Assembly (NCBI RefSeq): GCF_001194135.2
Contig: NC_068982.1
Span: 24,340,314-24,387,871, forward strand
DNA: 47,558 nt
Source of the DNA: Octopus bimaculoides
Lineage: Eukaryota
Direction of reading: 5' to 3'
The notes beneath the pieces are model-generated. The model did not search any database and was not told where the DNA came from. It worked only from the letters and a program-made list of their open reading frames with translations. Below, one piece after another: positions 19,530-22,600 of the stretch (position 1 is its first letter; every line of letters starts with the position of its first letter). The position numbers and the translations under genes were made by a program.

Positions 19530-19653
19530 ATACTTCATTTAGAGAATTAACATTGCTTGTTTTCACCTTTTCAATATCAGTGAAGAATTTCACTGGAAAA
19601 GAAGATATAAGGTTTGCCAGATTTTTGTCTCTCTCACCAAGGTCATCAGCTGT

Positions 19654-19698
19654 CGAACGCCGACGAAGGGAAATAACCCTGAAATCCGGATACGTTCG
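19654..19698 (+). ncRNA. Type I hammerhead ribozyme (U4C core variant, palindromic stem III)
   Basis: Stem I CGAACG/CGTTCG, perfect 6 bp. Core CCGACGA. Stem II AGGG-AAATAA-CCCT. GAAA. Palindrome ATCCGGAT. Predicted cleavage 3' of A19692 (AUA triplet). Confidence 0.8.
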
Positions 19699-22600
19699 TG
19701 CTGCTGATCGAGGTGAGAGGGATAACTCCCTTGGCAAACAGGACACAGTCGTGTGTCGATAAGCCAGCTGGAGGAGATGTCCTCCTGGGGCTAAAAGCAA
19801 CAGTAACATCCACCCCTAGGGGTCAGCCACACTTAAGTGGCAATATACNNNNNNNNNNNNNNNNNNNNNNNNNNNNNNNNNNNNNNNNNNNNNNNNNNNN
19901 NNNNNNNNNNNNNNNNNNNNNNNNNNNNNNNNNNNNNNNNNNNNNNNNNNAATATATTTTGAAACTTATTAATAATATTGTGCTTTTAATTATTAATTTT
20001 TCTATATGTGATAGTGGATTTTCATCGATGAGTTCTTGAAAATTGGTTATTTTCCCTAAAACTATATATATTTTATATATACTTTATCTATAAGGCTCAA
20101 TTTAATTTTTTATAAATTGATTTTAATTGAGTTTTTTACCTGTAATTTTGGATTTTGTCCCTAATAATATTATTATATATATATATATATATATCAGTCT
20201 TATATATGGCCGGTCGTTGTACCACCAAACTTAGTTTTAATTTAGAAATTAATTAATTGTAGAAATATTCATGTTGCATCGACATTAACAGCAACGAATG
20301 AATTATACTCCGTACGATTTTCTTCGTCGGAGGTCGAAGAGAAGCAAGACTGTAAGATGGTGGATTTCATTTTATTTTATCTAAGTTTCAACAGTTTTGC
20401 AAATACACAAACATTCAACATTTGAAACTGCATGATCCTTAATCGCGTTTCGTCAGTAAGGCATTAAATGATTCTCATGACAATTGTACATTAGGGAATT
20501 ACAGTAAGAATTTTCGTTTGCTTATCATCCAGTAACATATAAGATATCACCAGCACCCGTCAGCGCCGAAGAGGTATAGTGATATTAATGTCGATCAAAT
20601 GATTCAGAAACACACAATTACTTCCAGTACTCATATATTGTTCTGTTATCAAGGCTACGCTGAATAGGTTGGTAGAATAATGAAAGAAATACCTAGATAT
20701 ATTTTACCACTACAGAAAAAGAGCATTGAAGGCTGAATGACATGATGTGACAGAGTTATGCGTGGCCCACACAAGAACAGGTTATATTTAATGTACTTGG
20801 TGATTAATTACCGCACCAAAACACATTACACAGATCGTTGCTGCAAAATGATGATCGTCATCATTACTAAACCGACCATCCAATTGTGCTTATGTACCTG
20901 GTTGAAATTTATGCAGTGAAACGCTCACCATAAACAATGATTATGTCTTATTTGTTTTGGGTAACATTCGAAAGATATAATGCACATACTGTACCGTTCG
21001 AAAGTCTCCTTAAATAAGGGAGTTTTCTTTGGAATGAACTCCATTTCCATTTTGAAAGTGCACATTTCATTTCTGAAACTAACTTTTTCCGTTCAAACAT
21101 CATAGTCCACCACAATATATAATTTTGTGTCCTTTTAAAACATGGTTTAAATGGTTATACAAATATTTTTTTCTGAAAGAAATTAATCAATTAATCTATA
21201 AAAATCATTATGTCAGCTAATCTTCCATCTACTAAATGCTACCATAATGTCGCTTCAAAGACATATAGAAACATAAATGTGTGAAAACACATCACACGAT
21301 GAGGGTGCGATAGTACGAATCCAAGAGGTTTGTTAAGACAGTACGTACTGAAATGTTTTATTAAGGCAAAGAGAACAGTATTTAACTTTATAAAATAAAT
21401 TCAGAGAATGTACAACCCAGTATTAAATCTACTCTATCATTTGCAGTTATTTTGCTAATGAAGGAAGGAGCAACATGGAAGTCGATTTAGGTGGAATTTG
21501 AAATTAGAAATTAATGCTATTAATTCATTACGACTACGTATTTTGTTTGTCACGCTACTTTCTTGGTTAAATCCCCACCCTCTAAAACACATATATCAAA
21601 ACGGCAACAATTTAAAAATTATTTCCTAGATAGTCACAATTAATGTAATCAGAAGGAAAGAAAGAGTGATTTATGGGAATCAGGAAAAGTAAATGACATA
21701 AATTGGTTTCATTTTATTTTTATTCTTTGCTTCCGGCAATGAAATTGTGAGAAGTGACTTTTCATCTACGTCACCACCTGAACAATGTAAAATAGTATGT
21801 ACATAATTCAACTTAGAGGTTCACTCATTCACAACGCAGAGAGGAAGCGTGTGATGAAATTATTTATTGAAACCATATTTTTACTTAGAATGTATAACTG
21901 GAAACTTGTTTTCCAATGGATTTTCGTAACCTATTTATAAAATTCATGGGGCAGAAAACCCGAACACTGTCTGTGTTTTTTTTTTTTTTAAGCAGCCAAT
22001 CAAACATGCTTGTGTCCCCAGTCATTGCCCTCGTCGTTACTCGCCGCTTTATTGACACAACCTAATCTAATCTGTTCTTAACTTATTTACAGCAGTAAAG
22101 TTTGCTTAAGCAAGATTTCCGATGTTATAACTACACAGTTGAGCGAGTGCGTTCAGGCAAGGTTGGCGTCTTCCTCAGTTAATATTCAACAACTGCATCG
22201 AGATTTGATAGGCTACGAACAACCGCAATAATTTCTATAATTGTGAAGAATATCGTAAGATCCCTACCTCTGTAAAAAAGTATTAGCCGTAAGTTTCATT
22301 AAATGTTGGAAATGATCTTGGATTTCATATTTTTCCCAAATATTCTCAGTGGCTAAATCTGAATAAGAAATTTGATCAAGTCATCTTTAATTGTACTCAG
22401 CGCAATGAACACATCATATACGAGTCATTTATATATAAAAAAAAATATAATATAATATTTACATTACGCTATGCTATATTATACTATATTATATTATATT
22501 ATATAATATTATATTATAATATATTATATCTGAAAATATATATTATTTACCTTGATTGAAGTAAATTTTATATCACGCATTCAGGTGATGTGAGAGGAAC

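What the first reader, a model, noticed from the sequence alone, without database searches (positions are those of the whole stretch)
19631..19848. Near-complete hammerhead ribozyme inside a highly structured ~220-nt element: candidate retrozyme or circular-RNA-producing unit
Seen: type I HHR topology with stem I CGAACG/CGTTCG, core CCGACGA, stem II AGGG/CCCT, GAAA and palindromic stem III ATCCGGAT. Stem I extends beyond a UGU/UGCU internal loop as ATCAGC/GCTGAT (19645-50/19703-08) and CTCTCACC/GGTGAGAG (19631-38/19712-19). Five more hairpins or palindromes follow: GGGA-TAAC-TCCC, GACACA-GTCG-TGTGTC, GGAGGA-GATG-TCCTCC, ACCCCTAGGGGT and GCCAC-ACTTAA-GTGGC. The element is GC-rich in an AT-rich background and runs into an assembly gap at 19849. 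Established: minimal type I HHRs with palindromic stem III occur in Penelope pLTRs and retrozymes and can cleave as dimers; in other type I HHRs, stem I internal loops contact loop II. Inference: this may be a young non-coding retroelement whose tandem copies, collapsed in the gap, could yield self-cleaved or circular monomer RNAs.
Basis: partly seen in the sequence, partly recalled or inferred. Interest (0 to 1): 0.85.

Follow-up and report, generated by a model that had tools for sequence, protein, structure and literature searches.

The report
Hammerhead-like ribozyme relic in octopus repeat
A strongly folded non-coding repeat of at least 220 bases in an octopus genome begins with a motif built like the self-cleaving hammerhead ribozymes of animal "retrozyme" elements, but two of its most conserved positions are changed, so it is most likely a weak or dead copy of a known kind of mobile element.

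Summary
The window is a draft Octopus assembly, probably O. bimaculoides. The 19631-19848 stretch folds far better than shuffles in both halves (z -6.2 and -3.1). A neighbouring transposase remnant used as a control does not (z +0.5).

Bases 19654-19698 fit the canonical metazoan type I hammerhead layout. The layout matches published axolotl retrozyme hammerheads. A literature-based descriptor allowing one core mismatch finds only this site in the window and none in 300 shuffles.

It is not a consensus hammerhead:
- Position 4 is C, not U.
- The 10.1-11.1 pair is A-U, not G-C.
- No Rfam hammerhead model reports it, even at E<=10.
- A small covariance model of my own gives only 13.7 bits (E about 0.1).
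- The monomer fold hides the core. Only a dimer fold gives a double hammerhead.

One O. bimaculoides protein entry reveals a second copy, about 98% identical, with the same C4. Tandem repeats, circular RNA and cleavage could not be tested.

Verdict: probably a hammerhead-derived relic or variant in a retrozyme-like or Penelope-like non-coding repeat. Modest interest.

The parts
19625..19848 (+). Structured GC-rich non-coding element. The 5' boundary is at about 19625-19631. The 3' end is lost in the assembly gap, so the length is at least 218-224 nt.
   Evidence: RNAfold z -5.8 on the + strand. GC is 0.53 against 0.35 for the window. No other copy in the window. A second genomic copy is inferred from P0001.
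19654..19698 (+). Type I hammerhead-like motif:
- helix I: 19654-59 / 19693-98
- core C3-A9, CCGACGA with U4->C: 19660-66
- helix II: AGGG/CCCU with loop AAAUAA, 19667-80
- G12A13A14: 19681-83
- helix III: A15.1 U15.2 [CCGG] A16.2 U16.1, 19684-91
- H17 = A19692, the predicted cleavage site if the motif is active
   Evidence: Sequence. Only hit of the tight descriptor, and 0 of 300 shuffles. Top hit of my own model R1 at 13.7 bits, E about 0.11. No Rfam hammerhead hit.
19631..19653 (+). 5' strand of the distal extension of helix I (CUCUCACC, GGUCA, CAGC), plus the 3-nt internal loop UGU.
   Evidence: Minimum-energy and core-constrained folds. The hairpin 19631-19719 has z -6.2.
19699..19719 (+). 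3' strand of the distal extension of helix I (U loop nucleotide, GCUG, UGAUC, GGUGAGAG).
19720..19848 (+). Downstream structured body with hairpins GGGA/UCCC, GACACA/UGUGUC, GGAGGA/UCCUCC, CCCC/GGGG and GCCAC/GUGGC.
   Evidence: z -3.1 on the + strand and -2.8 on the - strand, with 2 of 200 shuffles as stable.
19849..19950 (.). Assembly gap (102 N) that truncates the element.

Best explanation
The segment is one copy of a short, highly structured, non-coding repeat of Octopus. It belongs to the retrozyme / Penelope-like pLTR kind of element. Its 5' end carries a type I hammerhead motif inherited from that lineage.

In active relatives, multimeric transcripts fold so that two neighbouring motifs pair through their palindromic helix III. 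This forms a double hammerhead that cuts after H17 (here A19692), and host ligases can circularise the released monomers.

In this copy the motif has U4->C and an A10.1-U11.1 pair. The C4 also lets the core pair with the helix III palindrome. The copy is therefore most likely catalytically weak or dead: a relic or a low-activity variant.

Shown here: the sequence, the fold statistics, the architecture match, the existence of a second copy, and the dimer fold. Inferred: retroelement origin, the mode of cleavage, and loss of activity.
For: 1. The architecture equals the published canonical metazoan type I hammerhead (PMC4209133): 6-bp helix I, 4-bp helix II, and a 1-2 bp helix III capped by a palindromic loop. 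Under core-unpaired folding it has the same distal helix, 3-nt:1-nt internal loop, 6-bp helix I, and 4-bp helix II with a 5-6 nt loop as the self-cleaving axolotl retrozyme hammerheads Ax353 and Ax330 (sequences from the PMC7229834 supplement).
2. The tight descriptor with at most one core mismatch gives this site only, and 0 of 300 shuffled windows.
3. It is the best hit in the window for a covariance model built from four validated retrozyme hammerheads.
4. GAAAY and RUH are intact. The only core change is U4C.
5. Both halves of the element are significantly structured, while the adjacent coding remnant is not. Highly paired retrozyme RNAs would be expected to look like this.
6. A second copy in O. 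bimaculoides differs by one loop insertion and two substitutions over 162 nt, and keeps CCGACGA.
7. The dimer minimum-energy fold is a double hammerhead with an 8-bp helix III: -58.3 against 2 x -26.7 kcal/mol.
8. Cephalopods carry hammerheads and active Penelope-like elements: 235 Rfam Hammerhead_1 loci in the giant squid (PMC6962438) and recently active PLE families in O. vulgaris (PMC13282606).
Against: - No Rfam hammerhead model reports the site at its gathering score, or at E<=10 on 299 nt or 73 nt.
- My own model gives only 13.7 bits, E about 0.11; the next window hit scores 11.6.
- U4 and G10.1-C11.1 are among the most conserved hammerhead features (PMC3088659), and both are changed.
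- In the monomer the hammerhead-competent fold is 7.8 kcal/mol above the minimum-energy fold, an ensemble fraction of about 2e-6.
- No tandem copy or second motif is visible.
- GC of 53% exceeds the reported retrozyme range (PMC7229834).
- No RT / GIY-YIG ORF with Pfam support lies nearby.
- Only one additional copy could be found, and it might be a haplotig or a segmental duplicate.
- One of its two substitutions breaks a distal helix pair without compensation (derived).
Confidence: 0.55

Rival explanations
1. Chance look-alike. The segment is some other structured repeat or hairpin, and its apical 45 nt merely resemble a hammerhead. Candidates include the stem-loop-bearing 3' end of a non-LTR element or SINE read on the minus strand, which runs into the (TA)n(TG)n tract at 19487-19529, or a pre-miRNA-like inverted repeat.
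For: - No Rfam hammerhead hit, and only a marginal score from my own model.
- Two conserved positions deviate.
- Loose one-mismatch descriptors hit about once per window by chance.
- Folding is nearly as good on the minus strand: z -4.7 and -2.8.
- The monomer minimum-energy fold is a simple extended hairpin.
- Generic hairpin models (mir-4529) match weakly on both strands.
Against: - The tight literature-based descriptor gave 0 of 300 shuffles.
- My analytic estimate (inference, not a tool result) is about 2e-4 per window, or about 10 per 2.7-Gb genome, before the matching internal-loop and distal-helix architecture is counted.
- GAAAY, RUH, the palindromic helix III and the A-rich 6-nt loop 2 all fit.
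Confidence: 0.25
2. The segment is the decayed N-terminal coding region of the adjacent Tc1/mariner-like (DDE_3) transposase on the minus strand. The hammerhead resemblance on the plus strand is then coincidental.
For: - The transposase remnant is firmly detected at 18882-19422 on the minus strand.
- Full-length relatives have about 130 more N-terminal residues, which would fall at about 19640-20030.
- A 113-codon ORF on the minus strand (19468-19809) stays open through the element, in the same frame (coordinate mod 3) as the 19422-19198 remnant.
- There is a weak FFTDIEK..NVNS match to FFSDEK..NSQN at about 19531-19590. The best pairwise z is 4.75, and 13 of 300 shuffles reach the maximum score.
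- GC is similar to the remnant core.
Against: - A family profile HMM gives -2.4 bits for the ORF.
- The element's translation has no signal against 50 N-terminal regions, with 55 of 300 shuffles as good.
- There are no Pfam hits.
- The confirmed coding remnant shows no excess structure (z +0.5), whereas the element does.
- The second copy is about 98% identical, while the transposon remnant is heavily decayed with frameshifts, deletions and a microsatellite. This suggests different ages.
Confidence: 0.1
3. It is an active retrozyme array. Tandem copies collapsed into the gap are transcribed, self-cleave as double hammerheads despite C4, and yield circular RNAs.
For: - The dimer fold is a double hammerhead.
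- The element abuts an assembly gap, and PLE or tandem insertions are known to break short-read assemblies (PMC8557442).
- The copy pair is young.
- A U4C hammerhead variant retains enough activity in vivo for viroid infectivity (PMC3088659).
Against: - The gap is sized at only 102 N.
- No repeat unit recurs on either side.
- The core deviations and the competing fold predict poor activity.
- No expression data are available.
Confidence: 0.1

Closest known systems
Metazoan non-LTR retrozymes with canonical type I hammerheads (Cervera & de la Pena 2020, PMC7229834), e.g. axolotl Rtz353/Rtz330
   Same: - 6-bp helix I followed by a 3-nt:1-nt internal loop and a long distal helix
- 4-bp helix II with a 5-6 nt A-rich loop
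- GAAAY
- a 1-2 bp helix III capped by a palindromic tetraloop, which implies dimeric action
- RUH (AUA here, GUA in Ax353)
- an element of a few hundred nt that is highly base-paired
   Different: - U4->C, and A10.1-U11.1 instead of G-C
- GC 53% against <45-50%
- no tandem repeat seen
- copy number apparently low, against thousands in the published cases
- no expression or cleavage data
Minimal hammerheads in pLTRs of Penelope-like elements (Cervera & de la Pena 2014, PMC4209133)
   Same: Type I topology, palindromic helix III / loop 3, predicted action as a dimer, and low intrinsic activity. PLEs are present and active in octopus genomes and favour microsatellite targets. (CA)n(TA)n lies about 100 nt upstream.
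   Different: [quoted passage not shown] None of these is present here. No RT / GIY-YIG ORF adjoins the element.
Natural hammerhead core variants (Perreault et al. 2011, PMC3088659), including the viroid U4C variant
   Same: A single substitution at an otherwise invariant core position. U4C is documented as strongly reducing activity in vitro yet remaining compatible with function in vivo.
   Different: Those variants were validated by cleavage assays and sit in otherwise consensus ribozymes. This one is untested and also lacks G10.1-C11.1.
Rfam Hammerhead_1 (RF00163) loci annotated in cephalopod genomes (235 in Architeuthis dux, PMC6962438)
   Same: Same host clade and the same ribozyme type.
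   Different: This locus does not reach the Rfam model even at E<=10.

Membership tests
Hammerhead ribozyme, type I | Conserved core C3 U4 G5 A6 N7 G8 A9 ... G12 A13 A14 | tested here: not met
   The core is CCGACGA / GAA. U4 is C, and all other core positions are consensus. The same C4 is in the second copy.
Hammerhead ribozyme, type I | Three helices around the core with helix I open; A15.1-U16.1; H17 not G | tested here: met
   Helix I is 6 bp and helix II is 4 bp. Helix III is A-U, U-A plus a CCGG loop. H17 is A19692.
Hammerhead ribozyme, type I | G10.1-C11.1 closing pair of helix II | tested here: not met
   The pair is A19667-U19680. PMC3088659 states that this pair is the most conserved apart from 15.1-16.1.
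Hammerhead ribozyme, type I | Match to the curated covariance models (Rfam RF00163, RF00008, RF02275-7) at the gathering score | tested here: not met
   No hammerhead family at the gathering score, nor at E<=10 on 299 nt or 73 nt. My own 4-sequence model gives 13.7 bits, E about 0.11.
Hammerhead ribozyme, type I | Site-specific self-cleavage | not testable with these tools
   Only thermodynamic prediction is possible. The monomer disfavours the active fold, at 7.8 kcal/mol above the minimum. The dimer minimum-energy fold is a double hammerhead.
Metazoan non-LTR retrozyme | Head-to-tail tandem repeats of about 150-450 bp, each with a type I hammerhead | tested here: inconclusive
   No repeat of the unit in the window or across the gap flanks. 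The element is cut by a 102-N gap after 218 nt.
Metazoan non-LTR retrozyme | Canonical (not minimal) type I hammerhead architecture with a loop 1 / loop 2 arrangement | tested here: met
   Same layout as Ax353 and Ax330 under constrained folding. The tertiary contacts themselves are not testable.
Metazoan non-LTR retrozyme | Low GC (<45-50%) and multicopy distribution | tested here: not met
   GC is 0.53. Only one further copy is detectable through the protein database. The host genome itself could not be searched.
Metazoan non-LTR retrozyme | Expression as linear and circular RNA | not testable with these tools
   No transcriptome access.
Penelope-like element pLTR min-HHR | Located in a repeat flanking an RT + GIY-YIG ORF | tested here: not met
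   No Pfam-supported RT or GIY-YIG domain in the ORFs tested (8088-8555, 15937-16580, and those overlapping 18965-19847). The nearest GIY-YIG-like string, seen by eye at about 16380-16520, is 3 kb away and separated by other repeats and a gap.
Penelope-like element pLTR min-HHR | Long helix II (6-8 bp), a bulged nucleotide between 9 and 10.1, G10.1-C11.1, short helix I | tested here: not met
   Helix II is 4 bp with no bulge, the closing pair is A-U, and helix I is 6 bp.
Penelope-like element pLTR min-HHR | Palindromic 15.2-16.2 / loop 3 | tested here: met
   AUCCGGAU is fully palindromic.
Tc1/mariner-like DDE_3 transposase (N-terminal region) | Detectable similarity of the minus-strand translation to the family's N-terminal HTH region | tested here: not met
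   The profile HMM gives -2.4 bits. A shuffle test shows no signal, with 55 of 300 shuffles as good.

The most novel reading that the evidence does not exclude
Octopus carries a retrozyme-like family whose hammerhead has a fixed non-consensus core (C4 and A10.1-U11.1). It nevertheless self-cleaves as a double hammerhead and produces small circular RNAs. That would make it a natural, functional U4C hammerhead in an animal genome.
Probability: 0.08. Interest if true: 0.6.

Novelty: new member of a known kind. Interest (0 to 1): 0.3.

Why it matters
If confirmed, this would add cephalopods to the animals that carry retrozyme-type hammerhead repeats. It would also supply a natural example of a hammerhead lineage in which U4C and a non-G-C 10.1-11.1 pair are shared by more than one copy. 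That is useful for asking how such motifs decay or tolerate core changes. Practically, it shows that covariance-model annotation misses one-mismatch relics that a structure descriptor recovers. If it is only a dead relic, it is ordinary repeat annotation.

Tried and rejected
- **Rfam:** the whole window at gathering score, and two permissive scans of the region. No ribozyme family; only noise hits (Clostridiales-2, HTH-XRE, mir-4529).
- **Self-BLAST** of the element against the window: no second copy. A 16-nt inverted match at 20322-20337 is at chance level.
- **Exact-pattern scans:** viral contigs twice and prokaryotic genomes gave nothing. The metagenome 20-mer gave one unrelated soil bacterial coding sequence.
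- **Translation trick to find other copies:** one frame found P0001. The five other frames, concatenated, found nothing.
- **Exact-product look-ups** of four ORFs or proteins: not on record.
- **tRNA/SINE head:** ARAGORN finds nothing in the element.
- **Pfam** on ORFs in and around the element: nothing credible. A DUF5919 hit is below its cut-off.
- **Transposase N-terminus hypothesis:** tested by tblastn, a profile HMM and shuffle tests, and not supported.
- **Inverted repeats as transposon ends:** only AT-rich, non-collinear pairs.
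Full report
**Source and context.** The window is an AT-rich (GC 0.35) eukaryotic draft assembly with seven N gaps and many microsatellites. 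A translation of the element's minus strand matches UniRef A0A0L8IHK6, an 'uncharacterized protein' of Octopus bimaculoides. The host is therefore an octopus, most likely that species. The neighbourhood is repeat-rich. A Tc1/mariner-like DDE_3 transposase remnant lies on the minus strand at 18882-19422 (tblastn E down to 1e-23; family HMM 73.8 and 19.8 bits). It is followed by an (AC)n(AT)n tract at 19487-19529.

**Observation.** The element folds far better than dinucleotide shuffles:
- whole element: z -5.8 (+) and -4.7 (-)
- hairpin 19631-19719: z -6.2
- downstream body 19720-19848: z -3.1
- confirmed transposase remnant, used as a control: z +0.5

The structure is therefore real and extends over the whole element. 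The 'GC island' is less distinctive than it looked, because the core of the transposase remnant is also about 50% GC.

**Is it a hammerhead?** Reading 19654-19698 as a type I hammerhead gives:
- helix I of 6 bp
- core C3 C4 G5 A6 C7 G8 A9
- helix II A10.1-U11.1 GGG/CCC with loop AAAUAA
- G12 A13 A14
- helix III A15.1-U16.1, U15.2-A16.2 capped by the palindromic CCGG
- H17 = A19692

This is the 'canonical metazoan' layout described by Cervera & de la Pena: helix I 6 bp, helix II 4 bp, helix III 1-2 bp with a small palindromic loop (PMC4209133). It satisfies their CUGANGA / GAAAY / RUH boxes except for U4.

I folded the octopus sequence and four experimentally self-cleaving retrozyme hammerheads from the PMC7229834 supplement, holding the core unpaired. 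The octopus motif has the same extended architecture as axolotl Ax353 and Ax330: a distal helix, a 3-nt (5'): 1-nt U (3') internal loop, a 6-bp helix I, and a 4-bp helix II.

**Chance.**
- A loose descriptor (stems of at least 4/3/3, one mismatch) hits about once per shuffled window and four times in the real window. Such matches are worthless by themselves.
- With stems of at least 6/4/4 the expectation is about 0.075 per window.
- A tight descriptor taken from the literature uses helix I of at least 5 bp, helix II of 4-6 bp with a 4-8 nt loop, a palindromic helix III, and at most one core mismatch. It finds this site alone and nothing in 300 shuffled windows.
- My analytic estimate (inference) is about 2e-4 per window, or about 10 sites per 2.7-Gb genome, before the internal-loop and distal-helix match is counted.
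- Cephalopod genomes do contain hammerheads: 235 Rfam Hammerhead_1 loci in the giant squid (PMC6962438). They also contain active Penelope-like elements (PMC13282606).

Descent from a real hammerhead is therefore more likely than coincidence, though not certain.

**Evidence against a functional or bona fide hammerhead.**
- No Rfam hammerhead model reports the site at the gathering score or at E<=10, even when only 73 nt are searched.
- A model I built from the four published retrozyme hammerheads ranks it first in the window, but at only 13.7 bits (E about 0.11). The next hit scores 11.6 bits.
- U4 is essentially invariant, and G10.1-C11.1 is the most conserved pair after 15.1-16.1 (PMC3088659). 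Both are altered here.
- A U4C viroid variant is reported to lose much activity in vitro while remaining viable in vivo (PMC3088659). C4 is therefore crippling but not necessarily lethal.
- In the monomer, C3C4G5 pairs with CGG of the helix III palindrome. The hammerhead-competent fold is 7.8 kcal/mol less stable, an ensemble fraction of about 2e-6.
- Two copies together have a double hammerhead with an 8-bp helix III as their minimum-energy structure: -58.3 against 2 x -26.7 kcal/mol. As for amphibian and PLE hammerheads, any activity would need two motifs in one transcript.

**Other copies.** The only handle on the host genome was the protein database. P0001 (54 aa) is the translation of another copy covering the equivalent of 19646-19809. 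Relative to the window it has:
- a 1-nt insertion in the GGGA-UAAC-UCCC hairpin loop
- A19656->G, which turns an A-U pair of helix I into G-U
- T19705->A, which breaks a distal-helix pair; the partner A19648 is retained, because the stop codon is kept
- CCGACGA unchanged

All of these are derived. C4 is therefore not private to this copy. At about 98% identity the pair is young, unlike the heavily decayed transposon next door. It could also be a haplotig or a segmental duplicate. Searches with the other five frames, exact-product look-ups and DNA pattern scans of the viral, metagenome and prokaryote collections found nothing relevant.

**Rival: transposase N-terminus.** Full-length relatives of the neighbouring transposase have about 130 residues upstream of the part preserved here. 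A 113-codon minus-strand ORF runs through the element in the same frame as part of the remnant. There is a weak FFTDIEK...NVNS resemblance to the family's FFSDEK...NSQN at 19531-19590. However:
- the family HMM scores the ORF at -2.4 bits
- the element's own translation shows no signal against 50 N-terminal regions
- Pfam finds nothing
- genuine coding remnant shows no excess RNA structure

I keep this rival at about 10%.

**Retrozyme, PLE or neither.** The motif is of the canonical (retrozyme) type, not the PLE minimal type. It has no long helix II, no bulge after A9 and no G10.1-C11.1. No RT / GIY-YIG ORF adjoins it. Against a typical retrozyme, GC is high, no tandem unit is visible, and copy number seems low. 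A recent preprint argues that animal retrozymes derive from PLE pLTRs (bioRxiv 10.64898/2026.07.22.740005), so the distinction may be one of degree. The 5' boundary of the element coincides with the base of the long hairpin at about 19625-19631. This fits either a 5'-truncated unit or a self-contained element. The 3' end is in the gap.

**Verdict.** This is most likely a hammerhead-derived relic or low-activity variant at the head of a structured non-coding repeat of the retrozyme / PLE kind (confidence about 0.55). A chance look-alike in an unrelated structured repeat is the main rival (about 0.25). The claims about tandem copies, circular RNA and cleavage remain untested. It is a new member of a known kind, of modest interest.

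Noticed in passing
window 18882-19422 (- strand), possibly to about 19590: Decayed Tc1/mariner-like DDE_3 transposase remnant with frameshifts and two 5-aa deletions. Its closest relatives are about 45-50% identical, including a Caligus rogercresseyi protein. A possible FFTDIEK first-D motif lies beyond an intervening (AC)n(AT)n tract.
   Followed up: yes
window 9672-9751 (+): ARAGORN calls an 80-nt tRNA-Thr(CGT)-like sequence, followed by a T-run at about 9757-9762. It could be a tRNA gene, a pseudogene or a tRNA-derived SINE head.
   Followed up: partly
window 15980-16580 (+): By eye, the translations contain 'EYLIRHDRL ... ILWHFPIQTVRKIDSSRPDLVIKD', which looks like a retroelement RT tail. 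This is followed by 'LYIGQTGSLLADLFAEHL...TPVSRHF', which looks like a GIY-YIG endonuclease of the Penelope-like type. Pfam gave no hit at E<=0.1, so this is unconfirmed.
   Followed up: partly
window 8088-8555 (+) and 29617-30081 (-): Two long ORFs look by eye like transposable-element fragments: an RT-like 'DVFSLYPFIDIDF' and a Helitron/Pif1-like 'AFWRVFNFPIHER'. Pfam gave no hit. The second ORF is not on record as a called gene.
   Followed up: partly
window 15740-15935, 17826-17885, 19487-19529, 20174-20194: Long trinucleotide (ATA/ATG) and dinucleotide (AC, AT) microsatellites. (TA)n tracts lie on both sides of the element, about 100 nt upstream and about 220 nt past the gap. PLEs are reported to prefer such targets, but no target-site duplication could be defined.
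   Followed up: no
window 20322-20337 (- strand): A 16-nt inverted near-match (14/16) to the helix I / core part of the motif (TCGACCTCCGACGAAG). The local alignment score is within the shuffle distribution, so it is treated as chance.
   Followed up: yes
L001 1287-1306: The 20-mer CTGAAATCCGGATACGTTCG occurs once in a soil metagenome contig, inside GC-rich bacterial-looking coding sequence. There is no flanking similarity, so this is a chance hit.
   Followed up: yes
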